IMG/VR virus record: IMGVR_UViG_3300042367_000228
Location: 1-64,000 of that record
Length of the DNA stretch: 64,000 nt
Direction: 5' to 3' (one strand)
The position numbers were made by a program, and so were the translations under genes. The notes beneath the pieces were generated by a model. It did no database searches and was not told the DNA's origin. It saw nothing but the letters and a program-made list of their open reading frames with translations. Each line of letters starts with the position of its first letter. Position 1 is the first letter of the stretch. Shown here one piece after another: positions 1 through 64,000 of this stretch.

Positions 1-128
1 GCATAGCAAGCGCATAGCATAGCAAGCGCATAGCATAGCAAGCGCATAGCATAGCAAGCGCATAGCATAGCAAGCGCATAGCATAGCAAGCGCATAGCAT
101 AGCAAGCGCATAGCATAGCAAGCGCATA
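1..128. repeat. Tandem repeat, 8 exact copies of 16-bp GCATAGCAAGCGCATA (may continue left of the window)
   Basis: Period-16 exact repeat read directly from 1 to 128. Confidence 0.97.
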
Positions 129-205
129 AATGCGCTTTAACGCGCGTTAAAACATTAAGCAATGCTAACGTAGCATTAAAAAAAATAATGCGCTTAAAAC
201 GCATT
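121..205. repeat. Chain of four adjacent inverted repeats/palindromes
   Basis: AGCGCAT-AA-ATGCGCT (121-136); perfect palindrome TTTAACGCGCGTTAAA (136-151); AATGCTA-ACG-TAGCATT (161-177); AATGCG-CTTAAAA-CGCATT (187-205). Confidence 0.9.
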
Positions 206-245
206 TAAACGCAATTTAGCGCGTGTAGTGTATAAACAACAAAAT

Positions 246-342
246 GTTGTAAAAAAACAACAACAACATTTTGTTGTAAAAAAACAACATTTTGTTGTAA
301 AAAAACAACAGACTGGGGGGGTATAGTTGTAAAAAAACAACA
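246..342. repeat. Four exact copies of 17-mer GTTGTAAAAAAACAACA (iteron-like, A7 tract)
   Basis: Copies at 246, 273, 294 and 326. Confidence 0.93.
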
Positions 343-424
343 AATTTTTTTAAACGCAACAACTCCTAAAAAATGACCCCATAGGTAGGAAATCACCGGT
401 CTGAATCTGTAAGTACTTCTTTCT

Positions 425-529
425 AATTTTTTGCGCAGCAAAAAATTACACCCCTCAGGACCAATTTCGGGTTTCAAATTTTTTTGCGCAAAATTTTTTT
501 AAACTCTGCAGGACCCGTTTCGGGCTCAC
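425..529. repeat. Two imperfect ~52-bp direct repeats (T-tract-GCGCA...CAGGACC..TTTCGGG)
   Basis: AATTTTTTGCGCAGCAAAAAATT...CAGGACCAATTTCGGGTTTCA versus AATTTTTTTGCGCAAAATTTTTTT...CAGGACCCGTTTCGGGCTCA; the first copy holds a perfect 10-bp inverted repeat (425-447). Confidence 0.75.
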
Positions 530-587
530 AGTCCGACCAGACAATATCTAACAGTGATATATACAGTATACACACAGTGGAGTTAAA

Positions 588-806
588 ATGGAACAATATA
601 ATCAAGAGCCGGATCCGGACAGCGTAGTCCCGGGCCGAGTAGAGTTTGAAAATGGTAGCAGTAAGTTTGTACACAGTGATTCTAGCCATCTCTATACGCT
701 AGTACACCGTCTAATGGAAACGGTAGATCGTCAAGCGCGTCAAATCTCAAGGATGGAATCATCCATAAGTGAAGTTAGGTCTACCATACGCAACCGTAGT
801 GAATAA
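588..806 (+). CDS. Small hypothetical protein with C-terminal coiled coil
   Basis: 72-aa ORF, GGAG Shine-Dalgarno upstream, heptad-like C-terminus. Confidence 0.55.
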   Translation: MEQYNQEPDPDSVVPGRVEFENGSSKFVHSDSSHLYTLVHRLMETVDRQARQISRMESSISEVRSTIRNRSE

Positions 807-3203: not shown

Positions 3204-4613
3204 CTAAAATTCGTCTACATCTAAATTGTTTATCAGGTCTCTAAGTGCAGTACTTTGTATGCTACCATTAACCTTTGCTACAGGTTTTCCGTCTGGATCT
3301 TGTGTAGTGCCGCGTGCCTTAATTGAGTTTAACAGTGCATTGCCTGCTGTGGGTGTAGATGTATTACCGTAGCCTTGATCTTCATCGATGTCTGTAATAC
3401 GCAATGTATCAATATCATATCCTAAATCGATCTTCATGCCAACGCCAGAACTGCTACGTGTTTTCATAAGCTGGATTTGATATCTACCACGCTCGCGCAT
3501 AGCTCTACTTGTAAAGATACCAAATACGTTATCTGCAGTTTGGATCTTACTTAACCCACCTGATATATGACTATGATCAAATTCTACTTCTTCTACTGCA
3601 CCCCTATTAAGCTGTGCCGCAGTAACAAACACACAATTCTTTTCTACTGCTAAGTTTCTTAATTCTTCTGATACATATTTGTCTTTAATGAATAAGTCTG
3701 CTGGGCTAATCTTTTTACTCATTGGCATTAACAAATCCAAGTAATCTACTAGTAATACGTCAACTTTTCTATCTGTTTTAATTTCATATTCTTTTAAATA
3801 ACTTCTAATATCGTTAGCAGTTTTACCTGATGGCATATATTTTACTTGTAATGATCCTGATTTCTTAGCAGTCATTTTAACTTTAAGTTCTACATCATCG
3901 ATATTTTTAAATACTTCTCTAGTCGAAACGCCTGTTATCATACTATCAATACGCATAGATACAAGTTCTTCACTAAGTTCTAGTGTTAAATAAACTACGT
4001 TAAATCCTGCTAGTGCCCAGTTAACACCTAAGTTAGCTAGGAATAAACTCTTACCTGCGCCTGACCCACCTGCAAAAATATTAAGCTCTCCCCTGTTCAT
4101 ACCACCGAACAGTTTGTCATCCATGTTCTTCCAACCTGTAGATACTTGGCCGTTCTTGTCTTTAATCTTCATTAATCGTTCACGCGGATTAGCAAAGTAG
4201 TCTGTACCTAAATCTTTTTGTAAGCCAATTTGTACTGCTTGTTTAATTTTATCTTCTACTGGACCGTATTCGCCTTTTTCAAGTAAGTCGGCTGATTCAT
4301 TAATAGCACGTTCTAATCCTTTGTGTCTAATAAATGTTTCAAAGTCGTTAAGCAGCCAATCATAATGTTCTTCTTTGAGTCCGTCTACTTCTTTAAAGTC
4401 GCTCTGCGTAGCAGCGTTAATTATATCGAAAGTTGGCATTACGTTGTGTTCGTCAACGTAACTGTTTATAAAGTCTGCTGATTTTTGTAATTTACGATCG
4501 AATAATCTGTAATCAAATATGGATTGGCATCTAACAAATGTAGCTGCATCGCTTATCATCATTTCTAAATATAACTTCTGTATATCATAACCATAGTCTA
4601 CGTTTTGTGCCAT
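3204..4613 (-). CDS. gp41: Replicative DnaB-type DNA helicase (T4 gp41-like)
   Basis: Walker A GGSGAGKS, LTLELSEE, VDYLDL, TAAQLNR, QLMKTRS motifs; adjacent to primase. Confidence 0.92.
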   Translation of the reverse strand: MAQNVDYGYDIQKLYLEMMISDAATFVRCQSIFDYRLFDRKLQKSADFINSYVDEHNVMPTFDIINAATQSDFKEVDGLKEEHYDWLLNDFETFIRHKGLERAINESADLLEKGEYGPVEDKIKQAVQIGLQKDLGTDYFANPRERLMKIKDKNGQVSTGWKNMDDKLFGGMNRGELNIFAGGSGAGKSLFLANLGVNWALAGFNVVYLTLELSEELVSMRIDSMITGVSTREVFKNIDDVELKVKMTAKKSGSLQVKYMPSGKTANDIRSYLKEYEIKTDRKVDVLLVDYLDLLMPMSKKISPADLFIKDKYVSEELRNLAVEKNCVFVTAAQLNRGAVEEVEFDHSHISGGLSKIQTADNVFGIFTSRAMRERGRYQIQLMKTRSSSGVGMKIDLGYDIDTLRITDIDEDQGYGNTSTPTAGNALLNSIKARGTTQDPDGKPVAKVNGSIQSTALRDLINNLDVDEF

Positions 4614-5590
4614 TCGATGTCCTTAAAATATTGTTTTGCTCTTAGTTGGATCTTAAGTGAATAAGATTGTTTTGCATCAATAATTAGCCAGAGCGTAGCC
4701 AATCTACCTAATTTAATAACAGCATCGTTAACATCTTTAATGCCATCGGGCCAGTCTGGCATGCTAACAGACCAGCCATATTCTATTGCTTGTTCTACAG
4801 TTTTAGGACCTTCGTGGTCTCTATCTGGTACTAGTATAATTTCTTTGTTTAATCTTTTCAAGAGCCAATCTTGTTTTTCTTTTATTTGTGAACCTAGAAT
4901 AGCGCAACCGTCTATGCTAATAGCATCAAATGGACCTTCGCATACGATGACAAATGCTCGATCATGTGTTTGCCTATCTAAGTTGAATACATAGTCAGGT
5001 TGTTGCTCAGAGAAGTAGCGTAGTTTCTTTTCTTGTGTTACCAGTCTTGCAGTATATCCTACGATGCGTTTTTCATAAAAGAATGGAATAATAAGTCTAT
5101 CGTTAAATCCAGTTTTAGGAGTCCAATAAAACGGATAGTCTTCTAAGTATAAATGTCTTTTATCGATGTATTCTAAAACTGGAATTAGTTTTTCTGGTAT
5201 TTTGTCTAAAAATGAAGTAATAGGGTGTGCATCAATTGGCATAGTTCTTAATTCAAATTTAGGCATTAGTGTTTTCATTACATACGTTTCAGATGCTTCT
5301 AAACGGAATGCTTCTAATGTAAGTTTACTAATTTCACTATCGCTCATGTTCAAGTAGATCATAAGTGATTTCATATTTTTACTAATGTGCCGACCTGGTT
5401 GCCAACTAGCCTTAAAGCTACAATTGAAGCAGTGAAACGTAACTGCATCGCCATCGTTAATAATAAATCCGCCACGTTGGCGGGTATCCTGGCAACAAGG
5501 TGCGTTGCCAGTTATCCATCCGCTTAAAGTTGTTTTAGTTCGCCTACCAGTAGTCCAGTACATTCGCAATGTATCTGTAATAAGGTTCAT
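4598..5590 (-). CDS. gp61: DNA primase (T4 gp61-like)
   Basis: N-terminal Zn-binding CC...HCFNC; TOPRIM motifs VCEGPFDA, VPDRD, KDVND. Confidence 0.88.
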   Translation of the reverse strand: MNLITDTLRMYWTTGRRTKTTLSGWITGNAPCCQDTRQRGGFIINDGDAVTFHCFNCSFKASWQPGRHISKNMKSLMIYLNMSDSEISKLTLEAFRLEASETYVMKTLMPKFELRTMPIDAHPITSFLDKIPEKLIPVLEYIDKRHLYLEDYPFYWTPKTGFNDRLIIPFFYEKRIVGYTARLVTQEKKLRYFSEQQPDYVFNLDRQTHDRAFVIVCEGPFDAISIDGCAILGSQIKEKQDWLLKRLNKEIILVPDRDHEGPKTVEQAIEYGWSVSMPDWPDGIKDVNDAVIKLGRLATLWLIIDAKQSYSLKIQLRAKQYFKDIEWHKT

Positions 5591-6443: not shown

Positions 6444-6821
6444 ATGGCAAACTTAAGAGATAACATAGAACAAAATCTACCATTTATTAGTGTTTTAAAC
6501 TACGGAAATGAAGAATACGTTGGAATAGTAATTAATCAAGACCAATATGTGACTAGTTTTTACGATTTAAATGCAATACAGTCTGCTGAAGACAAAGCTT
6601 CTTTCTTAGAAATAGGAGAAATATGGTGGTGGGAGTCAAATCGTCAATTTCCGATATCTATTTTTTGTAGAGAAGAAATTCGACCGTTTGCATACGCAAT
6701 CAAAACATTTAATAGTAAAGACACACGTATTATATTAGGTCCGGTTGTTAACTTGATGAATTTAACAATTAAACGAGTTAAACGAAAATCTGTTCAACTC
6801 GTTCGAAGACCACCCCGTTAG
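6444..6821 (+). CDS. Hypothetical protein
   Basis: ORF; ATG 6444 (MANLRD) preferred over 6414, which overlaps the divergent gene. Confidence 0.7.
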   Translation: MANLRDNIEQNLPFISVLNYGNEEYVGIVINQDQYVTSFYDLNAIQSAEDKASFLEIGEIWWWESNRQFPISIFCREEIRPFAYAIKTFNSKDTRIILGPVVNLMNLTIKRVKRKSVQLVRRPPR

Positions 6822-7384
6822 TTTTGTTCACAAATTAAATTCATTTGTACCACAATTGCCATAGCATACGCAATGGCATGTGATTTACGGAATGCGTATC
6901 CTGCATCAGTGTCTGTGTGGTCCCATATTTCGTTCATCACCGTAGTCCATTCTTTCCCAATCAAATAGCGTTTCGCCGGTCTTATCATCGCTAGGACTGC
7001 AGCTAATTGTTCCACCGAAGTCGGCTGCATCTGTTTCAGAATATCGGTATGCCCGTTTATATGAAATAGTAGATTTACAAAATCTTCTTGAAGAAGTAGT
7101 TCCCATATTGGTTCAGTTCCCATTAAATGTAATAAATGATTATTGTCTCTAATGTCTTTGTATATGTTGACATTTAGAAAATCAATTTTAAAATATCCCC
7201 TTTGCTCGGCTTCTTTATAGTCAATTGTACTTACACCTGTTATAGGATTGTGTGGTATGTTTTGACAATAGATGCCGGTGTTATGTCTCTTAAAAGTGTT
7301 TTCGTTACTAATGGCTGCCGTAACATGTTTCATCTTTGTTAGCGCGTGTGATCTATCAAAGAAATCTATATCTATGTCAGGCAT
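6818..7384 (-). CDS. dnaE: Miniature DnaE/PolC-like (C-family DNA polymerase) catalytic core
   Basis: PDIDIDF, KRHNTGIY, YFKIDFLNV, MIRPA and YAFRKSHAIAYA are colinear with DnaE PDFDVDF, KHAGGVV, KFDFLGL, LFRPG and YGFNKSHSAAYA; GGAGG SD upstream. Confidence 0.85.
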   Translation of the reverse strand: MPDIDIDFFDRSHALTKMKHVTAAISNENTFKRHNTGIYCQNIPHNPITGVSTIDYKEAEQRGYFKIDFLNVNIYKDIRDNNHLLHLMGTEPIWELLLQEDFVNLLFHINGHTDILKQMQPTSVEQLAAVLAMIRPAKRYLIGKEWTTVMNEIWDHTDTDAGYAFRKSHAIAYAMAIVVQMNLICEQN

Positions 7385-8610: not shown

Positions 8611-9116
8611 TATAGTAATTTGTCTAAATGTATTAATTCGCTTTGGCGTGATACTTCTTTTACAAAATATGCACAATCGGGTTTTGATTTTTGTTGTAAC
8701 GGTGTTGCTAGTAAATGACCTAATTTCATTTTAGGAAAATACCATTTAACATCGTTGTAAAAATTTACAATTTCGATCTTCTTGAATTCAATCCTAAAGT
8801 CTGATATTGGGTTAAACACTAGTGCATCAAACCCTCTATCATTTAAACTAGTTAACGGGAGTATTTCGATATGTGTTGCACTGCTACCATCTCCTACTGC
8901 AATACACCAATCGATTGGCATAGTTACTTCGTTATTACCAATTTTTAATACCATTGCTGGCGAATTAAATGATTCTAAATAGATTAATGGTGCAAAGAAG
9001 AAATCCGGATCTTGAGGATTACTGTTATCTAATACACCAAATCGCATGCTATCATCAACTTCGTCAGGCAAGCTGTTAAGTGAATACCACTCATTGTTAA
9101 CTGTTAATATATTCAT
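8610..9116 (-). CDS. Hypothetical protein, possibly a degenerate Hint-fold domain
   Basis: ATG 9116 overlaps the uvsW stop (ATGA); beta-strand pattern recalls Hint but lacks Cys1 and terminal HN. Confidence 0.6.
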   Translation of the reverse strand: MNILTVNNEWYSLNSLPDEVDDSMRFGVLDNSNPQDPDFFFAPLIYLESFNSPAMVLKIGNNEVTMPIDWCIAVGDGSSATHIEILPLTSLNDRGFDALVFNPISDFRIEFKKIEIVNFYNDVKWYFPKMKLGHLLATPLQQKSKPDCAYFVKEVSRQSELIHLDKLL

Positions 9117-11695
9117 TTCCAATCTACCTTATTAATTTCAAATGCATATTTTGCATCTTTATAAAATTTCTTTCTTTCTGCAAGATGTCTTTTAGCATAT
9201 TTGCAAGTACTAGTAATATCATAAATTTGCACAAAGTCTTTATCGTGTGCCTTTCTAATTCCTCTACCAATACTTTGTATAACTCTTGTAAAACTTTTAC
9301 CGGGTTCGATTAATACTAAATTAAAAATACGCGGAATATTAATGCCAACAGCAGCAACGCCATATGTTGCTACAATAATTTTATTTGATGCTGTTTTTAC
9401 TTCGTCGTATTCTGTTTTTCTATCTTTTGTTTTTACATTACCTGATACAAATACTGCATCTTCTATTTCATTTATAATAAAATTACCTGTTTCTATTCTA
9501 CCAACTAACACTAATGTATTTCCAGTTTCTGCAATAGTTCTAATAGTATCACTAATAAAACGCATTCTATCTTCATTTGTAACCTGATATTTTAATTCAT
9601 CTGCATATGACCGAAATGCTGGTAAATCAATTAGCTGCAGTACCTTTACATGACACGCAGACAATACACCTGCATCTTGTAATTCATGTGCTTTAATACC
9701 GCCTACTACAGGACCAATGCTTGCAAAGATTTGTTCATATTCAAACTTTTCTTTAGGCACCGTACCTGTTAATCCCCACCGAATTGGAGCATTACATAAG
9801 TTATGTGTAAGTAAGTTTTTTAATACATCGGCTTTTGCCATATGGACTTCGTCAACAATTACTGCGCAAACGCCGTCTAAAAATTCTGCTAATGTTATAA
9901 TGTCGTGTTCTTGATTTTTACTTTTCTTATCTAGTATGTTTAAACTTTGCCATGTACAAATTGTGTGTGTTTTGTCTAAATCCTTTTTATCACCGTAATA
10001 CATACCTACATCAAGATTCACGTTAACGAAGTCTTCACATGTTTGTTCTACTAAACTCTTATTTGGAACAATAACAATAGTACGACCGAATGGTTCACAT
10101 ACGTGAGCAAGCGTTGCTGTTGTTATCGTGTTATGAGTTACAATATAATCATCAGTAATATATAAATGATCCGGACTATCAATTAAAATACATTTAACTG
10201 GTTCAGTAGATACTAAGTTAATATCTGTAATATTAAGTTTTAAAGTATTTCCATATTGATATTTAAAGTTAGTAGCATTTTGTTTCCTAGATAATGATGT
10301 AAGCATCCACGGTTTAGGAAACTTAGTAGACACGGTATAAGAATCTTTACACGGGGTTCTTATTCCATTATACATATATGTATTATTAGTTTTTGTAAAA
10401 AGTTTTGCAATTCCACCGACACTTCTAACTAATCTTTGAAATCCGACCGCTAACTCATAACTAACCGATGTAAACTTAACACTAGATTTGTCAATTGTTC
10501 CATCACTATCAACTAATCCTCGTATAAGTTCTAATCGTTGTTCTAAACTACCTTTAAAATATATTTCAGGTATGAATTTAGAATGGCTGTATGTCTCCAT
10601 TAAGTTAAGGTCTGTTAAAATTTGAATATATTTATGAAATGAACTTTTAGAATCAGTAATATATCCTTTTTCATTTCTAATTTTATTTTTCATATGTAAC
10701 GATTTTTTATTTTGTAAAATTTTATCAGTTTTAAATGAAATTCCATAATCATACCGTGTTACATGCGTAACTTTATAGTTTTCGTCTAACTTTGATGAAA
10801 CTTTGTTAATTAGTTCATCATCAGCTGAACTAAATCCAACATGGTTATTTCTAAAACTACCGTCACCTAATAAAAACCCTAACAGCCATGGATCTAATGG
10901 TAAATTAATATCAGTATTATCATATTCCATAGTAGCCAATGGGATTCCAACTGATCTCTTAGTAGATTTTTTTAGTTTAATTAACTCACGTGTTGAAATA
11001 TTCCGTATTGAACCTGTTGACGATCTGCCCCACCCAATATTATATATTGGCCATATGTGGTCTTCACATGATCTTGCAGATCGTCCATCATAGAATGATA
11101 GTTCATACACATCCTTAATTCCTGGTTCATAAATTTCTAATATTGGCACTGATTTTCCGGTTGGAGTTATTACATAATCCCCAACTTGCATTTCGCCCAT
11201 TGTCTTCCACCCATCCGGTGTTAAAACTTTACTAGAGTAAGGTTGGCATTTACCGGCACCTGTGGCAATTTCTTGTAATGCTTGAGTTTGTGTTAAAAAT
11301 TTATTAATAGCTTCAACTTGATAGTCACGTAACATAATAGGCTGTCCGGCTTGAGAATGCCCTTCAGGCCATACTTTGCCTTGATCTGCCCAATATGATT
11401 CTGTAACTGGTGTAAAGTTTAATTTATAATGCTTTCTTAAATCTTCTATTTCGTCTATTTCAATACCGCTTTTATTAAGTACAGATAATATTGCTTCTAA
11501 ATTATTTAAATATCCAGTCCCGCCTAATCCAAATAGGCTAACAGTGCCGTCCCATCTACCTAACTTAAAAGAAGGTTGATATCTAGCATACGGCACTTCG
11601 AACTTAAATGTGTTTGCTAATTTCTTACGCACATCTAATGGCAAATTTTCAAACTTAATATTAACTTCGTCTTTTATGACTAATTTAACTCCCAT
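9113..11695 (-). CDS. uvsW: UvsW-like SF2 DNA helicase containing an intein
   Basis: LRDYQ Q-motif, ATGAGK/T Walker A split by the intein, VDEVH, GLTGT, QSIGRGIR; lies beside uvsY and uvsX. Confidence 0.92.
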   Translation of the reverse strand: MGVKLVIKDEVNIKFENLPLDVRKKLANTFKFEVPYARYQPSFKLGRWDGTVSLFGLGGTGYLNNLEAILSVLNKSGIEIDEIEDLRKHYKLNFTPVTESYWADQGKVWPEGHSQAGQPIMLRDYQVEAINKFLTQTQALQEIATGAGKCQPYSSKVLTPDGWKTMGEMQVGDYVITPTGKSVPILEIYEPGIKDVYELSFYDGRSARSCEDHIWPIYNIGWGRSSTGSIRNISTRELIKLKKSTKRSVGIPLATMEYDNTDINLPLDPWLLGFLLGDGSFRNNHVGFSSADDELINKVSSKLDENYKVTHVTRYDYGISFKTDKILQNKKSLHMKNKIRNEKGYITDSKSSFHKYIQILTDLNLMETYSHSKFIPEIYFKGSLEQRLELIRGLVDSDGTIDKSSVKFTSVSYELAVGFQRLVRSVGGIAKLFTKTNNTYMYNGIRTPCKDSYTVSTKFPKPWMLTSLSRKQNATNFKYQYGNTLKLNITDINLVSTEPVKCILIDSPDHLYITDDYIVTHNTITTATLAHVCEPFGRTIVIVPNKSLVEQTCEDFVNVNLDVGMYYGDKKDLDKTHTICTWQSLNILDKKSKNQEHDIITLAEFLDGVCAVIVDEVHMAKADVLKNLLTHNLCNAPIRWGLTGTVPKEKFEYEQIFASIGPVVGGIKAHELQDAGVLSACHVKVLQLIDLPAFRSYADELKYQVTNEDRMRFISDTIRTIAETGNTLVLVGRIETGNFIINEIEDAVFVSGNVKTKDRKTEYDEVKTASNKIIVATYGVAAVGINIPRIFNLVLIEPGKSFTRVIQSIGRGIRKAHDKDFVQIYDITSTCKYAKRHLAERKKFYKDAKYAFEINKVDWK
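10130..11248 (-). mobile_element. Intein (373 aa) with LAGLIDADG homing endonuclease
   Basis: Starts CQPYSSKVLTPDG after GAGK, ends YIVTHN before +1 Thr; LLGFLLGDGS and LIRGLVDSDG motifs. Confidence 0.95.
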
Positions 11696-22854: not shown

Positions 22855-23781
22855 CTATGAACTTAATAATCGCATAATATCGCCCATTGTTAGTTTTTCA
22901 ATTTTTCCAGATGGCCATTTAACAGTTACAACTGAATCATGCACAATACAACCGTATTCACGTCTAAACTTTTCTTCACCTATACGACCGAGCTCTTCTT
23001 GTTTCCATTCTTCATCTCGATCTGGATGATCCCACCAGTCAGACCGGAACCCAGAAAATCCATTAATTCCGATCTTGTTTGGTTTTTCATTCCCAAACTC
23101 ATCAAAAAACTGTTGGCTTTCCTTCCATATAGTAGCAAATTGATCTTCGTCACTGTTTGGTGTAGAAGTAATAATACAACGTCCACCAGTTGCTAGTGTA
23201 GGTGATATAGAAGTCCAAAACTCTTCAGCAATGTTAGGTTGTAGGAAAGCAAACTCATCGCAATATAATAACGAAATACTCATACCCCGTCCTGTTGTGC
23301 CAGTAGTAGTTTGACTTACAATACGTGATCCATTATCAAATTCCATAGACCCTTTATTGTAACTTACTACACCTGCACGTAAGAAGTCTGGACATAGTTC
23401 GTATCCATAACGTATACGTTGCATAATCTCTTGAGCACCTGTGTACTTGTGCGCTGCGATTAAAATAGTTTGATCCGGGTGAAACATTGCATACCATAAT
23501 AAGTATGCAGATGCACATGTTGTTTTACCACTTTGACGCGGTAACATATTAATATTAAAACGATGAGCATGATAACAATTTAATAAGTTAACTTGATAAT
23601 CAAATGGTTGAAATAATAATTTACCTTTTACTGAATGTTGGATATGAAAGAAGTTTCTTGAAAAATGTAAAAATCCGTCAGCCGGATCCGAACACATTAA
23701 TATATCATTAATCTGTTGTTCGTCAAATTTTTCAGTCTTGTGTGCTTTTTTTGTAAGGACACCGTCTAGCGATTTACCCAT
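22855..23781 (-). CDS. terL: Terminase large subunit, N-terminal ATPase half, ending in split-intein N fragment
   Basis: PRQSGKTT Walker A, YCDEFAF Walker B, STPN; ends FRREYG-CIVHDSVVTVK...; ATG 23781 follows GTAAATA (23807-23813). Confidence 0.92.
   Translation of the reverse strand: MGKSLDGVLTKKAHKTEKFDEQQINDILMCSDPADGFLHFSRNFFHIQHSVKGKLLFQPFDYQVNLLNCYHAHRFNINMLPRQSGKTTCASAYLLWYAMFHPDQTILIAAHKYTGAQEIMQRIRYGYELCPDFLRAGVVSYNKGSMEFDNGSRIVSQTTTGTTGRGMSISLLYCDEFAFLQPNIAEEFWTSISPTLATGGRCIITSTPNSDEDQFATIWKESQQFFDEFGNEKPNKIGINGFSGFRSDWWDHPDRDEEWKQEELGRIGEEKFRREYGCIVHDSVVTVKWPSGKIEKLTMGDIMRLLSS
22858..22950 (-). mobile_element. Split intein, N fragment (31 aa)
   Basis: CIVHDSVVTVKWPSGKIEKLTMGDIMRLLSS: block A-like, Cys1 at the conserved EY(E/G)|CEF terminase site. 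Confidence 0.82.
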
Positions 23782-23813
23782 ATATAATCCTTTTTTTTGT
23801 ATTATGTATTTAC

Positions 23814-23841
23814 AAAAAAAAGCGGACATAATGTCCGCTTT
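23814..23841 (-). terminator. Intrinsic terminator
   Basis: AAAGCGGACAT-T-ATGTCCGCTTT followed by a T-tract on the minus strand. Confidence 0.8.
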
Positions 23842-56144: not shown

Positions 56145-56152
56145 TTTTAACC

Positions 56153-57283
56153 TTATACTATTTGTAATCCCATTGTCGAATAAATTCCACCAGTAACGTT
56201 ACTCCAGTTACTTAAAGTTCCGACTTGCATTGGGCTTGATCTATTGGTTGTATCCAATAATCCTAATCGACCTTGAGCATTTAAACCCCAAGTCCATAAT
56301 GTTCCGTCTGTTTTTACTGCTGCTGTATGAAATTGCCCGCAAGAAATTTTACTCCAGTTGGATAGAGTCCCAACTTGCGTTGGGCTTGATCTATGAGTTA
56401 AATCTCCTAATCCCAATTGACCAAACGTATTATTTCCCCAAGTCCACAATGTTCCGTCTGTCTTAATCGCTGCTGCAAAAAAACTTCCAGAAGAACTCGA
56501 AACTTTACTCCAGTTAGATAGAGTCCCAATTTGCACTGGGCTTGATCTATGAGTTAAATCTCCTAATCCCAATTGACCCAAACTATTACCACCACAAGTC
56601 CATAATGTTCCATCTGTTTTTACTGCTACTATGTGATTTTGTCCAGCAGAAATTTTACTCCAGTTGGATAGAGTTCCAACTTGTACTGGGCTTGATCTAT
56701 TGGTTACATCGGCTCCTAATTGGCCAAGACCATTTAAACCCCAAGTCCATAATGTTCCATTTGTTTTTACTGCTGCTGTATAATATTGCCCACAACTAAC
56801 TTGACTCCAGTTAGATAGAGCACCAACTTGTATTGGGGTACTTTTATTGGCTGTATCGCCTAATCCTAATTGACCATAAGTAGCACTATTTCCCCAAGCC
56901 CATAATGTTCCGTCTGTTTTAATTGCTGCTATATGATTCCATCCAGCACTAACTTGACTCCAATTAGATGCAGGTACAACTTGATTTGGGCTACTTTTAT
57001 TGGTTGTATCAGTTAATCCTAGTACAAGATAAATATTAAATCCCCAAGTCCATAATGTTCCGTCTGTTTTAATAGCCGCTGCAGAATGATTTCCGATAGA
57101 AATTTGACTCCAGTTAGATAGAGTCCCAATTTGCACTGGGCTTGATCTATTGGTTATATCAGATAATCCTAATTCTCCATATGTTTGGCCAAACCCCCAA
57201 GCATACATATTCCCAGTTGTCTTAAACATAGCCGTGGACATATATCTTGTTTGTAATTTTGTTCCAGTTACTTTATAAGTCAT
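56153..57283 (-). CDS. RCC1/BLIP-II repeat beta-propeller protein (7 blades)
   Basis: Seven ~52-aa repeats HxAAIKTDGTLWTWGxNxxGQLG...SSPVQVG. Confidence 0.93.
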   Translation of the reverse strand: MTYKVTGTKLQTRYMSTAMFKTTGNMYAWGFGQTYGELGLSDITNRSSPVQIGTLSNWSQISIGNHSAAAIKTDGTLWTWGFNIYLVLGLTDTTNKSSPNQVVPASNWSQVSAGWNHIAAIKTDGTLWAWGNSATYGQLGLGDTANKSTPIQVGALSNWSQVSCGQYYTAAVKTNGTLWTWGLNGLGQLGADVTNRSSPVQVGTLSNWSKISAGQNHIVAVKTDGTLWTCGGNSLGQLGLGDLTHRSSPVQIGTLSNWSKVSSSSGSFFAAAIKTDGTLWTWGNNTFGQLGLGDLTHRSSPTQVGTLSNWSKISCGQFHTAAVKTDGTLWTWGLNAQGRLGLLDTTNRSSPMQVGTLSNWSNVTGGIYSTMGLQIV

Positions 57284-60216
57284 AATAGTGAAGCCAAAGT
57301 TGTATTATCCATTGCATAAACGCTAACGTATGTATTTAGCGTTCCGACTTGTACAGGGCTACTTGTATTAGTATAATTTTCCTGACCTAATTGACCAGAA
57401 CTATTTAAACCCCACGCCCAAAGAGTTCCATCCGTTTTTATGGCAACAGAATGATAGTTACTTGCTGCAATTTTGCTCCAATTAGATAAATTACCAATTT
57501 GCGTTATACTTGAACGATGAGTTACATCTCCTAACCCTAATTGACCATAACTATTATTACCTATAGACCAAAGAGTTCCATTAGTTTTTAAAAATAATCC
57601 ATGTGTTAATCCAGCAACAACTTTAGACCAACCAGTATCTAACGATATTTGAATAGGAGAGTAAACATTACTAGAAAGTCTACCTAATTGTCCATAAGCA
57701 TTATTACCCCAAGTCCATAATGTTCTGTCTGTCTGAATAGATCCTGTATAATAAGCTCCAGCAAAAATTTGATTCCAGTTACTTAACGATCCAACTTGTA
57801 CTGGGCTTGATCTATTGGTTACATCGTCTCCTAATTGACCTTGAACATTATAACCCCAAGTCCATAATGTTCCGTCTGTTTTTATCGCTGTTGTATGACG
57901 ATATCCGCAAGCAATTTTACTCCAGTTACTTAAAGCTCCGACTTGTACTGGACTACTTCTATTTGTTGTATTAGATAATCCTAGTTGACCCCAATTATTT
58001 AAACCCCAAGTCCATAATGTTCCGTCTGTCTTGATCGATGCTATATGCGCAAGTCCAGCGGCAACTTGACTCCAATTAGATAAACTACCAACCTGAACTG
58101 GACTTGATCTATCGACAAATGAATCTGATATTCCTAAATAACCATTAACGTTACTACCCCAAGCCCATAATGTTCCATCTGTCTTGATCGATACTGTAAG
58201 ATATCCTCCAGACGAAATTTGACTCCAATTCGATAAAGTTCCAACTTGCGTTGGGCTTGATCTATTCGTTATATTCGATAACAGTCCTAATTGGCCTTGA
58301 CCATTATAACCCCAAGTCCATAATGTATTATCTGTTTTAATTGCTGCTGTATGATAATATCCACAAGCAACTTGACTCCAGTTAGATAACAACCCAACTT
58401 GTACTGGGCTAGATCTATGGGGTACATCAGATAATCCTAATTGACCATAACTATTATTTCCCCAAGCCCATAATGTATTATCTGTTTTAATAGATGCTGT
58501 ATGATAATATCCACAAGCAACTTGACTCCAGTTAGATAGAGTTCCAACTTGTACTGGGCTTGATCTATTGGATGTATCGAATGATCCTAATTGACCAAAA
58601 CTATTACCACCCCAAGTCCATAATGTTCCATTTGTTTTTACTGCTGCTGTATGATGATATCCACAAGAAAACTTAGTATTAGTTGTAACATCATATAAAC
58701 CTGGATACGAAGGTAATACAACTTTTTGAACAACAGGATTAATACCAACTTGACCAAAACTAGTTAACCCCCAACTCCAAAGCGTAGTATCTGGTTTAAT
58801 ATAATAGCCAAATCTATCACCGAACGATGCTTCTATTGCAGAGTCTATTACAACTGGCAAAGCAATAACAGTTCCGTTTGATGACGAATTAACGTAAGTT
58901 GGATATAGCGACAAGTAATCCAAATAAGATTTTGTAGTTAGCAAATAATCTGCATTATTGCCGAATGCATACAAATTACCATCAGAATTGATAGCAGCAC
59001 CCCAAGCAGTATTTTGAGTTCCTGTTGGAAATTTATTCCAACTAGAAGATGATACTTGATTAATATTAGAACGATATGAAATATCAGAATACCCTAATTG
59101 ACCTTGATTATTTAAACCCCAAGCCCATATTGCTCCGTTTGAATTAATCGCTACTGTATGAGACGCTCCACCAGAAATTTTACTCCAGTTACTTAAAGTT
59201 CCAACTTGTACTGGGCTTAATCTAGCAGCAGTATCTGATAATCCTAATTGACCATAATTATTTTGACCCCAAGACCATAATGTTCCATCTGTTTTAATTG
59301 CTAATGTATTATACCGCGCGACAAAAACGTTACCCCAATTTGATAGCGCACCAACTTGTACTGGGCTACTTCTATCAGGTATATTGTTTAATCCTAATTG
59401 ACCATAATTATTTTTACCCCAAGACCATAATGTTCCATCTGTTTTAATTGCTAATGTATCGCCATATCCACAAGAAACTTTACTCCAATTTGATAGCGCA
59501 CCAACTTGTACTGGGCTATATCTATCTGTTGTATTAGATAATCCTAATTGACCATTACCATTCCAACCCCAAGACCATAATGTTCCGTCTGTCTTGATTG
59601 CCGTTACATGGGCGTAAAAGCCAGAAATTTGACTCCAATTGGATAGAGAGCCAACTTGTACTGGACTATATCTATTCGTTATATCAGAGAACCCTAATTG
59701 ACCATAAACATCATTACGACCCCAAGTCCATAATGTTCCATCTGTCTTGATCGCTGCGTTATATTCATACCCGCTAATAATTTGGCTCCAGTTGGATAAA
59801 GTTCCAACTTGTACTGGGCTATATCTATCAGTTGTATCAGATAATCCTAATTGACCATAAAAATTATAACCCCAAGTCCATAATGTTCCATCTGTTTTAA
59901 TCGCTGCTGTATGATCATATCCGCTACAAACTTTACTCCAGTTACTTAAAGTTCCAACTTGTACTGGGCTTGATCTATTGACTTGATCGGATAATCCTAA
60001 TTGACGAAAACTATTTAAACCCCAAGTCCATAATGTTCCATCTGTTTTAATCGCCGCTGAATGATTTTCTGCGCAAGAAACTTGACTCCAATTTGTAACG
60101 CTTAAAGGGGTCGGAACTGAAGGCAAAAACCGATAATTTCTACCAACTTCCCAAAGAGTGCTATCGTTTTTTATTATATAATTTGAATTATTTTTTATAC
60201 CGTAATATTGAGTCAT
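57280..60216 (-). CDS. RCC1/BLIP-II repeat protein (~19 blades)
   Basis: Same repeat, counted by eye. Confidence 0.93.
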   Translation of the reverse strand: MTQYYGIKNNSNYIIKNDSTLWEVGRNYRFLPSVPTPLSVTNWSQVSCAENHSAAIKTDGTLWTWGLNSFRQLGLSDQVNRSSPVQVGTLSNWSKVCSGYDHTAAIKTDGTLWTWGYNFYGQLGLSDTTDRYSPVQVGTLSNWSQIISGYEYNAAIKTDGTLWTWGRNDVYGQLGFSDITNRYSPVQVGSLSNWSQISGFYAHVTAIKTDGTLWSWGWNGNGQLGLSNTTDRYSPVQVGALSNWSKVSCGYGDTLAIKTDGTLWSWGKNNYGQLGLNNIPDRSSPVQVGALSNWGNVFVARYNTLAIKTDGTLWSWGQNNYGQLGLSDTAARLSPVQVGTLSNWSKISGGASHTVAINSNGAIWAWGLNNQGQLGYSDISYRSNINQVSSSSWNKFPTGTQNTAWGAAINSDGNLYAFGNNADYLLTTKSYLDYLSLYPTYVNSSSNGTVIALPVVIDSAIEASFGDRFGYYIKPDTTLWSWGLTSFGQVGINPVVQKVVLPSYPGLYDVTTNTKFSCGYHHTAAVKTNGTLWTWGGNSFGQLGSFDTSNRSSPVQVGTLSNWSQVACGYYHTASIKTDNTLWAWGNNSYGQLGLSDVPHRSSPVQVGLLSNWSQVACGYYHTAAIKTDNTLWTWGYNGQGQLGLLSNITNRSSPTQVGTLSNWSQISSGGYLTVSIKTDGTLWAWGSNVNGYLGISDSFVDRSSPVQVGSLSNWSQVAAGLAHIASIKTDGTLWTWGLNNWGQLGLSNTTNRSSPVQVGALSNWSKIACGYRHTTAIKTDGTLWTWGYNVQGQLGDDVTNRSSPVQVGSLSNWNQIFAGAYYTGSIQTDRTLWTWGNNAYGQLGRLSSNVYSPIQISLDTGWSKVVAGLTHGLFLKTNGTLWSIGNNSYGQLGLGDVTHRSSITQIGNLSNWSKIAASNYHSVAIKTDGTLWAWGLNSSGQLGQENYTNTSSPVQVGTLNTYVSVYAMDNTTLASLL

Positions 60217-61665
60217 TTATACTCCATAAACTGCTTTTGTAGGAAAAGGTACTGTATCAAACAATCCTAATTGACCTAGATTATTATAACCACAAGTCCA
60301 TAATGTTCCGTCTGTTTTGATCGATGCTGTATGAATATTTCCGCAAACAACTTGACTCCAGTTACTTAAAGTCCCAACTTGCGTCGGGCTAAGTCTCTGC
60401 GTTAAATCAGATAACCCTAGTTGACAGTTACTATTGGCACCCCAAGTCCATAATGTCCCGTCTGTTTTGATCGCTGCTGTATGATACTGACCGCAAGAAA
60501 CTTTACTCCAGTTAGATAAAGTTCCGACTTGTACTGGACTCAATCTATTAGCTGTATCAGATAATCCTAAGTTACCAAAAAAATTATAACCACAAGTCCA
60601 TAATGTTCCGTCTGTTTTTATTGCTGCTGTATGATGCCGTCCGCTAGCAACTTGACTCCAGTCGGATAGCGTACCGACTTGTACTGGGCTTGATCTATTA
60701 ACTGCGTTAGCTAACCCTAATTGACCGCTAGAATTCTGCCCCCAACTCCATAATGTTCCGTCTGTTTTAATCGCTGTTGTATAATATCTCCCACCAGAAA
60801 CTTGACTCCAGCTGGATAGCGTGCCAACTTGTACTGGACTCGATCTATTCGTTAAATCAGATAATCCTAATTGACCTTGATCATTTGCACCCCAGGACCA
60901 TAATGTTCCATTTGTTTTGATCGCTGCTACATAATGCTGACCGCAAGCAACTTGGTTCCAGTCGGATAGCGTACCAACTTGCGTTGGTCTTAATCTATTT
61001 GTTAAATCAGATAATCCTAATTGACCATAACCATTATAACCGCAAGTCCATAATGTTCCGTCTGTTCTAATTGCTGCTGTATGTTGAACTCCACCAGCAA
61101 CTCGGTTCCAGTTGGATAGCGTACCAACTTGTACTGGGCTTGATCTATTAACTGCGTCAGATAACCCTAATTGGCCAGAAACGTTATAACCCCAAGTCCA
61201 TAATGTTCCGTTTGTCTTAATCGATGCTGTATGAGACTCTGCTCGAGAGATTTTACTCCAGTTAGATAAAGTCCCAACTTGTATCATAATAGATTTAGAT
61301 GTAGTAATAGCTTGCGCCCACGCAGCAGTTTGTGGAGTATTTTCTAAAGCACCGAAGGCTCCCCGAATATACGTTTGTGAAGTATTAGCTCTATTGGAAA
61401 ATATTATTGCGCTTGGTAATACAGCAACTATATCAGCAAAATTATCTAAATCAAGTTTTGGAAGATTTAATACTGCATTACCAGCATTAAATGCATTACC
61501 TACATTTAACGCGTAATATCCAGAAGAACTAATATTATTTTGACCAAATACAACAGTTTTTCTACTAGAAATATTTAACGTTTCTATTGGAAAATAATTT
61601 ATATCATTTGCATTAATATAAGTATAATCTAAATCAACAGAATTTAGTTTATAATTAGAACTCAT
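60217..61665 (-). CDS. RCC1/BLIP-II repeat protein (~7 blades) with unique N-terminus
   Basis: Same repeat; starts MSSNYKLNSVDLD. Confidence 0.93.
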   Translation of the reverse strand: MSSNYKLNSVDLDYTYINANDINYFPIETLNISSRKTVVFGQNNISSSGYYALNVGNAFNAGNAVLNLPKLDLDNFADIVAVLPSAIIFSNRANTSQTYIRGAFGALENTPQTAAWAQAITTSKSIMIQVGTLSNWSKISRAESHTASIKTNGTLWTWGYNVSGQLGLSDAVNRSSPVQVGTLSNWNRVAGGVQHTAAIRTDGTLWTCGYNGYGQLGLSDLTNRLRPTQVGTLSDWNQVACGQHYVAAIKTNGTLWSWGANDQGQLGLSDLTNRSSPVQVGTLSSWSQVSGGRYYTTAIKTDGTLWSWGQNSSGQLGLANAVNRSSPVQVGTLSDWSQVASGRHHTAAIKTDGTLWTCGYNFFGNLGLSDTANRLSPVQVGTLSNWSKVSCGQYHTAAIKTDGTLWTWGANSNCQLGLSDLTQRLSPTQVGTLSNWSQVVCGNIHTASIKTDGTLWTCGYNNLGQLGLFDTVPFPTKAVYGV

Positions 61666-63998: not shown

Positions 63999-64000
63999 CC

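What the first reader, a model, noticed from the sequence alone, without database searches (positions are those of the whole stretch)
246..342. Phased iteron-like 17-mers: candidate replication origin
Four exact GTTGTAAAAAAACAACA copies start 27, 21 and 32 bp apart; the last two spacings are about 2 and 3 helical turns. Each copy has an A7 tract inside a TGTTG/CAACA inverted repeat. Phased A-tracts bend DNA and iterons bind initiators (established). The block lies about 3 kb from the helicase/primase genes. Origin function is inference.
Basis: partly seen in the sequence, partly recalled or inferred. Interest (0 to 1): 0.6.

Follow-up and report, generated by a model that had tools for sequence, protein, structure and literature searches.

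The report
Amplified dyad sites, candidate phage origin
The four 17-mers are real, conserved copies of a protein-binding-type palindrome that related lake jumbo phages carry once, inside a conserved gene-free control region next to the replication genes; a replication origin is the best guess but is not shown.

Summary
There are four exact 17-mers at 246, 273, 294 and 326, unique in a 372-kb jumbo-phage genome.

**What the unit is.** It is an 18-bp palindrome, TGTTGT-A6-ACAACA. The block lies in one gene-free region of about 1 kb that spans the contig junction; the contig ends overlap by 128 bp. That region also holds:
- a variable 16-mer tandem array;
- GCGC palindromes;
- a G7 run;
- the most AT-rich 200 bp of the genome;
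- a nearly invariant core of about 42 bp (377-418, minus strand).

**Comparison with relatives.** The core occurs once per genome in 33 distinct related lake-phage contigs, 2-5.5 kb past the DnaB helicase, where two gene blocks converge. Fifteen relatives carry the same palindrome once; four carry a different dyad at the same place. Only this phage and a sister lineage have four copies. Between these two, 1 of 68 repeat positions changed against 11 of 29 spacer positions (p = 3e-6). The sites are therefore under constraint.

The spacings shifted (32/21/27 against 30/21/25), so phasing is weak. Genome skew only follows gene strand and is uninformative.

**Verdict.** Best reading: initiator-type dyad sites of a lytic origin, confidence about 0.4. 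Rivals are a transcribed leader or regulatory site, and a packaging or genome-end site. No reads, RNA or binding data were available to decide between them.

The parts
1..128 (.). Tandem array of the 16-mer GCATAGCAAGCGCATA. It is 8 copies here and the same 128 bp close the contig's other end. The true array is 8-9 units in other assemblies and variable in the population.
   Evidence: K-mer depth is 3.5-16 times that of the flank in four runs. The sister lineage has 12-18 mixed 11/16-mer units that differ between contigs.
129..232 (.). Stretch of short palindromes with a GCGC core flanked by A and T runs. More of them lie across the junction at G000 371,490-371,830.
   Evidence: 35 of the genome's 456 GCGC lie in about 1.1 kb around the junction. 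Sequence.
233..349 (.). Dyad block: about 10 alternating half-sites ACAACA / TGTTGT. It contains the four 17-mers at 246-262, 273-289, 294-310 and 326-342.
   Evidence: Four copies are also present in the sister lineage, with 1/68 repeat positions changed against 11/29 spacer positions.
326..342 (.). The ancestral copy of the dyad. It sits in the position where relatives have their single TGTTGY-N6-RCAACA site, between the core and the G/C run.
   Evidence: Alignments.
311..325 (+). G7 run followed by TATA. It is the only run of 6 or more G or C in the genome. Relatives have a C5-7-N-C5 tract on the helicase strand at the same place; the sister lineage has GCCGGCCGGCC instead.
377..418 (-). 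Nearly invariant core, read on the minus strand: AAGTACTTAYAGATTC, 5 variable bases, GGTGATTT, then CCTAT. It is single-copy in the genome.
   Evidence: 27 invariant columns across 25 diverse relatives. Unique in G000. Found in 33 distinct loci.
419..527 (-). Two imperfect repeats of about 50 nt. Each has a GCGC-A6-7 box and a CCCGAAAnGGGTCC box, and both boxes are conserved in relatives upstream of the core.
   Evidence: Family D5; alignments.
588..806 (+). Small gene p72, transcribed away from the non-coding region. The gene in this position differs between relatives.
   Evidence: No Pfam or PHROG match.
3204..5590 (-). DnaB-like helicase (3204-4613) and Toprim primase (4598-5590), the conserved neighbours of the element.
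   Evidence: In relatives the helicase lies 2-5.5 kb from the core.

Best explanation
**What it is.** The four 17-mers are amplified copies of one conserved dyad-symmetric recognition site, TGTTGY-N6-RCAACA. This is the geometry of a site for a dimeric DNA-binding protein. The site belongs to a single-copy, clade-wide cis-acting control region at the end of the replication-gene block.

**Most likely function.** The region is most likely the phage's lytic replication origin. A phage protein would occupy the dyads: one in most relatives, four here and in a sister lineage. The nearly invariant 42-bp core beside them would be the assembly site. The very AT-rich stretch across the junction would be the part that melts.

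**Role of the extra copies.** They would raise local occupancy, as lambda (4) and Stx phages (6) differ in iteron number.

**Shown.** The sites, their uniqueness, their conservation and constraint, the conserved position near helicase/primase, and the AT-rich extreme.

**Inferred.** That a protein binds, that the region fires replication, and which protein does it.
For: - **Exact repeats beyond chance and unique in the genome**.
- **Dyad conserved at a fixed place.** It lies 48-113 nt after the core start in 15 of 33 distinct relatives. The inner base pair changes symmetrically (C/G to T/A) and the A/T spacer is free to vary and flip. Four further relatives carry a different 6-bp-arm dyad at +43 to +48.
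- **Four copies kept in a sister lineage.** Its flanking genes are 77-93% identical in DNA. There, 1/68 repeat positions changed against 11/29 spacer positions, Fisher p = 3.4e-6.
- **Stable in the population.** The block is identical in independent assemblies and in contigs of runs dated 2016-2024.
- **Core is single-copy**. It is not upstream of any conserved gene: genes on one side vary, and the other side is the 3' end of a converging gene.
- **Linked to the helicase.** It always lies 2-5.5 kb beyond the DnaB helicase.
- **AT-rich extreme.** The most AT-rich 100- and 200-bp windows of the whole genome lie in the same gene-free region, second least stable by nearest-neighbour energy.
- **T4-type replication set.** UvsW, helicase and primase are present.
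- **Published parallels.** Lambda ori is four 19-bp imperfect inverted repeats next to an AT-rich tract, six in Stx phages (PMC7466680). T4 oriE has iterons conserved in syntenic regions (PMC3016281).
Against: - **No initiator found.** The conserved neighbour is a T4 NrdC.10-like AAA+ protein of the clamp-loader/ORC/RuvB clade with unknown role. In this genome it lies about 9.5 kb away.
- **Converging gene blocks.** The element sits where two large gene blocks converge, whereas T4 origins lie near transcriptional divergence (PMC3016281).
- **Skew is uninformative.** Cumulative GC skew has its maximum here, not its minimum. After regressing out gene strand, no replichore signal is left: an origin or terminus at the element explains at most 5%.
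- **Most relatives have a single dyad.** Repeated initiator sites are therefore not essential to the element.
- **Spacing not conserved.** Two of the three spacings changed by 2 bp, and phasing is not significant.
- **No DnaA boxes and no GATC cluster**.
- **The AT-rich peak is 370-470 bp from the dyads, not adjacent**.
- **No coverage, read-start or RNA data could be had**.
Confidence: 0.4

Rival explanations
1. **Transcribed control region.** The region would be a long leader or a small non-coding RNA. The core would be a promoter or a conserved RNA 5' part. The dyads would act as operator sites or RNA hairpins that tune expression of the small flanking genes (p72, p143).
For: - A promoter-like cassette (A.AGGCCCCGCTGTA) occurs 22 times, all on the + strand and all in 320-372 kb. 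Its last copy lies inside this region and points at the 16-mers, the dyads and p72.
- Locally, p143 and p72 diverge from the region.
- The pattern of an invariant stretch followed by a dyad whose sequence can change but stays symmetric fits an RNA with a hairpin.
- The nearest cultured relative, PA5oct, has abundant ncRNAs in ORF-free regions (PMC7318152).
Against: - No Rfam family matches.
- The consensus fold of the core shows no compensatory pairs.
- The hairpins are weak and are not followed by conserved U runs in either direction.
- Sigma-70-like sites are not above chance.
- The core motif is unique, so it is not a general promoter.
- The genes next to it differ between relatives. In most relatives both neighbours end at the element rather than start there.
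Confidence: 0.25
2. **Packaging or genome-end signal.** The conserved core would be the terminase recognition or cut site, or the boundary of a long direct terminal repeat. The repeat arrays would be accessory binding sites.
For: - PA5oct, the closest cultured relative (helicase 54% identical), has 39-kb direct terminal repeats that carry early genes. Its estimated boundary at 39,080 lies in a gene-free stretch next to 12-mer tandem repeats (PMC7318152).
- Here the element borders a 52-kb block of small genes that has its own cassette motif.
- A nearly invariant, single-copy 42-bp core is what a conserved terminase would require.
Against: - The large terminase gene is 22 kb away.
- PA5oct's ends lie within a run of same-strand small genes, not at a convergence point.
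- Several long assemblies run through the element, and the contig break here is explained by the tandem array.
- The depth step seen next to it in four runs is explained by two co-existing strains joined at a SNP bubble.
- Contigs cannot show ends, so this rival is untested rather than refuted.
Confidence: 0.12
3. **Neutral repeat expansion.** One functional dyad exists, and the three extra copies, like the neighbouring 16-mer array, are slippage products without a function of their own.
For: - Most relatives have one copy.
- The region is a hot spot of variable tandem arrays, both in this phage and in more distant relatives such as L164, L167, L158 and L191.
- Spacers between copies evolve very fast.
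Against: - All four copies stayed exact, apart from one base, in a lineage whose spacers changed at 38% of positions.
- The copy number is the same in both lineages and in samples spanning 2016-2024, while the 16-mer array next door varies.
Confidence: 0.1
4. **Fork-meeting or recombination site.** This would be a terminus, a fork barrier or a resolution site placed where the two converging gene blocks meet.
For: - The site shows convergent transcription and the cumulative skew maximum.
- It is a strain-level recombination boundary.
- It has a conserved protein-site-like core.
Against: - No recombinase or Tus-like gene was found next to it.
- No replichore signal exists in the skew at all.
- The core is not dyad-symmetric like dif or lox sites.
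Confidence: 0.06

Closest known systems
Origin of phage lambda and Stx phages (O-protein iterons)
   Same: - Several copies of an 18-19-bp imperfect or perfect inverted repeat with an A-rich centre.
- The copy number differs between related phages (4 in lambda, 6 in Stx phages; here 1 or 4).
- There is an AT-rich tract in the same region (PMC7466680).
   Different: - No sequence similarity.
- The repeats are not inside an initiator gene, and no O-like initiator was found.
- The AT-rich extreme is about 400 bp away rather than adjacent.
- The host phage is a T4-like jumbo phage with UvsW/UvsX-type replication.
Phage T4 origins (oriE iterons; oriF/oriG promoter plus unwinding element, R-loop primed)
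   Same: - A T4-type replication gene set, including UvsW, which in T4 removes origin R-loops.
- Short repeats conserved in syntenic non-coding regions of relatives.
- A role unproven, as for the oriE iterons.
- A promoter-like cassette and an AT-rich tract are at hand (PMC3016281).
   Different: - T4 iterons are 12-nt direct repeats, not palindromes.
- T4 origins lie near transcriptional divergence, whereas here the gene blocks converge.
- T4 origins share no conserved core, whereas this element has a nearly invariant 42-bp core across a wide clade.
Boundary of the direct terminal repeat of Pseudomonas phage PA5oct
   Same: PA5oct is the closest cultured relative. Its boundary is likewise a gene-free stretch with short tandem repeats bordering a block of small early genes (PMC7318152).
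   Different: - No sequence similarity.
- The gene context differs: same-strand genes on both sides in PA5oct.
- PA5oct's helicase is about 108 kb from that boundary.

Membership tests
Iteron-type replication origin (lambda / plasmid type) | Several copies of a specific initiator-binding repeat | tested here: met
   There are four exact copies, unique in the genome. They are conserved in a sister lineage under constraint. However, most relatives have a single copy.
Iteron-type replication origin (lambda / plasmid type) | AT-rich unwinding element next to the repeats | tested here: inconclusive
   The genome's most AT-rich 100- and 200-bp windows lie in the same gene-free region, but 370-470 bp from the dyads, beyond the 16-mer array.
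Iteron-type replication origin (lambda / plasmid type) | Cognate initiator gene in or beside the origin | tested here: not met
   - The flanking genes p72, p143, p61, p117 and p589 have no initiator-like family or fold.
- The neighbouring AAA+ protein is NrdC.10-like with unknown role.
Iteron-type replication origin (lambda / plasmid type) | Initiator binding and autonomous or phage-dependent replication | not testable with these tools
   This needs a gel shift or pull-down and a plasmid replication assay in a cultured host.
Iteron-type replication origin (lambda / plasmid type) | Strand-composition switch or coverage peak at the site | tested here: inconclusive
   - The skew switch is present but is fully explained by gene strand; the residual replichore signal is absent.
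- Coverage could not be obtained because only contigs were served.
T4-type R-loop origin (promoter plus downstream unwinding element) | Promoter that fires into an AT-rich unwinding element | tested here: inconclusive
   - A promoter-like cassette points into the region, but its promoter activity is not shown.
- Sigma-70-like sites are at chance level.
T4-type R-loop origin (promoter plus downstream unwinding element) | Location near transcriptional divergence | tested here: not met
   The main gene blocks converge on the element in this genome and in about 30 relatives. Only two or three small genes diverge locally.
Packaging site / terminal-repeat boundary | Defined molecule ends or a two-fold coverage boundary at the site | not testable with these tools
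   All 24 runs are kept as contigs. The one depth step is explained by strain mixture.
Packaging site / terminal-repeat boundary | Position in or beside the terminase genes (pac type) | tested here: not met
   The terminase large-subunit match is at window 22,939-23,547, about 22 kb away.
Operator of an adjacent regulated gene | Palindromes overlapping the promoter of a conserved neighbouring gene | tested here: not met
   The genes starting next to the core are unrelated between relatives. In most relatives the neighbours end there.
Known structured RNA (Rfam) or intrinsic terminator | Match to a covariance model, or a GC-rich hairpin followed by a U run | tested here: not met
   - Only two chance-level miRNA matches, far below gathering score.
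- No terminator-like site at the dyads.
- No compensatory pairs in the core.

The most novel reading that the evidence does not exclude
The region is a transcription-primed origin of a kind not described for jumbo phages. A block-specific promoter cassette (GGCCCCGCTGT) would drive a transcript through the repeat arrays and dyads and across the conserved G run. A stable RNA-DNA hybrid would form there and prime DNA synthesis next to the invariant core. The logic is that of T4 oriF/G, ColE1 and the G-rich conserved block of mitochondrial DNA. The dyad-binding protein would set how often it fires. If so, the 42-bp core plus dyad plus G/C run would be a sequence signature that locates origins in a whole clade of uncultured lake jumbo phages.
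Probability: 0.1. Interest if true: 0.75.

Novelty: new variant of a known kind. Interest (0 to 1): 0.5.

Why it matters
Origins, genome ends and other cis-acting sites of jumbo phages are almost unknown. For uncultured phages they are normally invisible.

This case provides a single-copy non-coding element with a nearly invariant core, conserved across dozens of related lake phages and always tied to the helicase block. It also provides a dyad site whose copy number differs between lineages under visible constraint.

That gives:
- a concrete, short DNA probe (the 18-bp dyad and the 42-bp core) for pull-downs;
- a marker for aligning and orienting metagenomic jumbo-phage genomes;
- a defined place to look for coverage peaks or read-start pile-ups.

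If it is the origin, it would be the first one proposed for this phage clade. If it is a genome end or an RNA, the same tests would show that.

Tried and rejected
- **18-mer scan of IMG/VR.** It gave 120+ single hits in unrelated contigs. The low-complexity pattern is uninformative.
- **DNA searches of named phages** with the block and with a relative's module: no match.
- **Rfam at a permissive threshold:** nothing credible.
- **Promoter/terminator consensus scan:** at chance level.
- **Sequencing runs.**
  - All runs are served as contigs only, so there is no coverage profile, no ends and no RNA.
  - The roughly two-fold depth step at window 580-640 at first looked like a terminal-repeat boundary.
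  - I rejected that reading: the ratio is four-fold in one run, and a SNP bubble shows two strains sharing the region.
- **Whole-genome skew:** the inflection is a gene-strand effect. The regression found only a compositional island at 48-68 kb.
- **DnaA boxes and GATC clusters:** none.
- **Helical phasing of A/T tracts:** not significant here and inconsistent in the sister lineage.
- **RNA consensus fold of the core:** one 4-bp stem without compensatory change.
- **AAA+ neighbour as initiator:** the fold is generic for the clamp-loader/ORC/RuvB clade. It is a T4 NrdC.10 homologue, and the true clamp loader is elsewhere. It is a lead only.
- **p143 as the binding protein:** the model is confident (pLDDT 86), but no fold match was found (Foldseek E above 0.7; VIA-align Z at most 3.6).
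- **p589:** only a weak ADP-ribosyltransferase lead.
- **PA5oct.** Its helicase, terminal-repeat boundary and AAA+ regions share no sequence with the element.
- I re-ran it from the stored protein file.
- **No complex prediction was run,** since no binding partner could be nominated.

Full report
**1.

The 17-mer occurs exactly four times, at 246, 273, 294 and 326. No looser match exists in the window. The chance expectation is 0.08, and 0 of 100 shuffles reached four. It occurs nowhere else in the 372,016-bp genome on either strand.

Read with one more base, three copies are perfect 18-bp palindromes, TGTTGT-A6-ACAACA. The fourth starts with A. Between them lie the opposite dyads, ACAACA-(A/T)3-4-TGTTGT. 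Window 233-349 is therefore a run of about ten alternating half-sites. As a single strand it folds better than every shuffle (dG -24.8 kcal/mol, z -4.1).

**2. Where it lies**

The window is the first 64 kb of a one-contig genome with 35.6% G+C. Gene content marks it as a jumbo phage:
- a DnaB-like helicase at 3204-4613;
- a Toprim primase at 4598-5590;
- UvsW with an intein at 9113-11695;
- a clamp loader and a terminase.

The helicase is 54% identical to that of Pseudomonas phage PA5oct and about 50% to Atu_ph07. The runs that hold the DNA are lake-water metagenomes.

The contig's first and last 128 bp are the same eight copies of a 16-mer. Two independent IMG/VR contigs with identical genes run through the junction, with 8 and 9 full units. 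The map is therefore circular, about 371,888 bp, and the contig start is an assembly cut in a tandem array.

The finding therefore sits inside one gene-free region of about 1 kb. It runs from G000 371,490 (start of the leftward gene p143) across the junction to window 587 (start of the rightward gene p72). The region holds, in order:
- an A/T-rich stretch with many palindromes that have a GCGC core;
- three 11-mers;
- one copy of a GGCCCCGCTGT motif;
- the 16-mer array;
- more GCGC boxes;
- the dyad block, with the genome's only G7 run inside it;
- a conserved core;
- two 50-nt repeats.

It contains 35 of the genome's 456 GCGC and the most AT-rich 100- and 200-bp windows of the whole genome.

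**3. Relatives show what is old and what is new**

Helicase-anchored loci from IMG/VR, a motif scan and contigs carrying p143 relatives gave 33 distinct versions of the same non-coding element.

Read on the helicase strand (the window's minus strand), its order is:
1. a CCCGAAAnGGGTCC box;
2. a GCGC-A6 box;
3. the core AAGTACTTAYAGATTC, five free bases, GGTGATTT;
4. a short variable spacer;
5. one dyad;
6. an A/T stretch with TATA;
7. a C-rich tract.

Twenty-seven columns are invariant across 25 diverse sequences. The core motif is unique in this genome, so it is not a general promoter.

The context is also conserved:
- In about 30 relatives the core lies 2-5.5 kb past the helicase, at the end of that gene block.
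- It faces the 3' end of a converging block that begins with a 290-aa AAA+ gene. In this genome about 9.5 kb separate the element from that gene.
- The small genes that start next to the core are unrelated between relatives.

On the dyad itself:
- Fifteen of the 33 versions carry TGTTGY-N6-RCAACA, always once, 48-113 nt after the core start.
- The spacer varies and can read A-rich or T-rich.
- The inner pair changes symmetrically.
- Four other versions have a different 6-bp-arm dyad at +43 to +48.
- The nearest relatives (L029, L274, L314, L226) have the identical or nearly identical 18-mer once.
- The copy at 326-342, next to the G run, is therefore the ancestral one, and 246-310 is an amplification.

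More distant relatives (L164, L167, L158, L191) carry hypervariable tandem arrays of other short units at the equivalent place.

**4. The four copies are under constraint**

A sister lineage (L333-L335) has flanking genes 93%, 92% and 77% identical in DNA. It also has four copies. Between the two lineages, 1 of 68 repeat positions changed against 11 of 29 spacer positions (Fisher p = 3.4e-6).

Other differences between the two lineages:
- The G/C run was replaced by another G+C-rich tract.
- One spacer flipped from A-rich to T-rich.
- Two spacings shrank by 2 bp: 32/21/27 became 30/21/25 in the same orientation.
- The 16-mer array differs even between contigs of one lineage, with 12-18 units, and in k-mer depth between samples.

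The dyad block itself is identical in contigs from runs dated 2016 to 2024. The sites and their number are therefore kept. Exact helical phasing is not: the phasing of all A/T tracts is not above chance here (P 0.11-0.25) and is inconsistent in the sister.

**5. Tests of the origin idea**

*Skew.* Cumulative GC and AT skew have their maximum at the junction and their minimum near 320 kb. This polarity matches converging transcription, not a bacterial-type origin.

I regressed per-gene skew on gene strand plus a two-replichore term over all origin/terminus pairs:
- Skew of all positions is a gene-strand effect.
- Third-position skew shows nothing.
- The best replichore models only pick out a compositional island at 48-68 kb.
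- An origin or terminus at the element explains at most 5%.

The skew test therefore neither supports nor refutes an origin.

*Reads.* All 24 runs are served as contigs, so coverage and ends cannot be read. A two- to four-fold depth step at window 580-640 is explained by two co-existing strains that share the element and diverge to its left, joined at a SNP bubble.

*Other tests.* No DnaA boxes or GATC cluster, no Rfam family, promoter and terminator consensus at chance level, and no compensatory pairs in the core.

*Proteins.* The flanking proteins p72, p117, p589, p143 and p61 have no informative family. The p143 model is confident but matches no solved fold. The AAA+ neighbour is a homologue of T4 NrdC.10, with a fold generic for the clamp-loader/ORC/RuvB clade. 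The true clamp loader lies elsewhere. It is a lead, not an initiator.

**6. Reading**

The facts to be explained are these:
- The element is single-copy and conserved across a clade.
- It is tied to the helicase block but is not the promoter of any conserved gene.
- It has an invariant core.
- Its dyad site keeps symmetry while its sequence may change.
- It has a G/C run and an extreme AT-rich tract.
- Its flanks expand and contract by repeat slippage.

This is what a cis-acting DNA site for a protein machine looks like. I think an origin is the most likely such site (0.4), for three reasons:
- its link to the replication genes;
- the AT-rich extreme;
- the close formal likeness of the dyads to lambda's 19-bp inverted-repeat iterons, whose number also differs between related phages (PMC7466680).

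T4 oriE offers a precedent for conserved iterons of unproven role in this wider phage group (PMC3016281).

Against an origin stand:
- the converging gene blocks;
- the lack of an initiator;
- the single dyad in most relatives;
- the absence of any direct replication signal.

The rivals are:
- **A transcribed leader or regulatory site (0.25).** It is helped by the GGCCCCGCTGT cassette, which points into the region, and by PA5oct's ncRNAs (PMC7318152).
- **A packaging or terminal-repeat boundary signal (0.12).** It is suggested by PA5oct's 39-kb repeats, whose boundary lies next to 12-mer tandem repeats.
- **Neutral expansion (0.1).** One search counts against it.
- **A fork-meeting or recombination site (0.06).**

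**7. Verdict**

The new point is that the 17-mers are a lineage-specific, constrained amplification of one dyad in a conserved, previously undescribed non-coding element of uncultured lake jumbo phages.

Noticed in passing
G000 320,295-371,876 (outside the window except its last copy at the contig end; L001:19,854-19,868): The motif A.AGGCCCCGCTGTA occurs 22 times. All copies are on the + strand and all lie within a 52-kb block of small + strand genes, mostly 17-195 nt upstream of a ribosome site and start codon. It looks like a block-specific promoter or regulatory cassette. It is also present in relatives L226, L029 and L274. No T7-like RNA polymerase is in the genome.
   Followed up: partly
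window 1-128 and G000 371,889-372,016: The contig ends are the same 128 bp, eight 16-mers. IMG/VR's label 'direct terminal repeats' for this record is therefore an assembly overlap in a variable tandem array, not a phage terminal repeat.
   Followed up: yes
G000 362,300-362,420; relatives e.g. L133:14,080-14,190: There are three hairpins whose loops carry (A/T)TCGCTCC, just after the AAA+ (NrdC.10-like) gene. In relatives the same motif, as CCGGGAGCGAATCGG, occurs twice directly beside the element, one copy inside a terminator-like hairpin.
   Followed up: partly
L123:13,946-14,063 (window about 551-668): Lake samples hold two co-existing strains. They are identical across the non-coding element and differ to its left, starting with 7 SNPs at the start of p72. 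The element is a recombination boundary. A third, L029-like strain with a single dyad is in the same samples.
   Followed up: partly
window 56,150-64,000: Five or more adjacent large minus-strand ORFs are built of 150-nt (50-aa) tandem repeats at 71-80% identity. The same area, 48-68 kb, is a compositional island with strongly negative GC skew.
   Followed up: no
window 9113-11695: The UvsW-like helicase is interrupted by a LAGLIDADG domain, which looks intein-like.
   Followed up: no
window 6818-7384 and 22,855-23,829: A 188-aa ORF matches only the end of DNA polymerase families. A 324-aa ORF matches only the N-terminal terminase domain. Both genes may be split.
   Followed up: no
L001:19,042-19,473 (G000 371,058-371,489, minus strand): p143 is the gene that starts at the left edge of the region. 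It belongs to a small family found only in the lineages that have GCGC or GCAAGC boxes. It gives a confident model (pLDDT 86) with no match to any solved fold.
   Followed up: partly
PA5oct NC_071039.1 245,979-247,789: The cultured relative has a 1.8-kb, very AT-rich gene-free region at a divergent strand switch, about 1 kb upstream of its NrdC.10-like AAA+ gene. It includes the annotated ncRNA004. It shares no sequence with the element studied here.
   Followed up: partly
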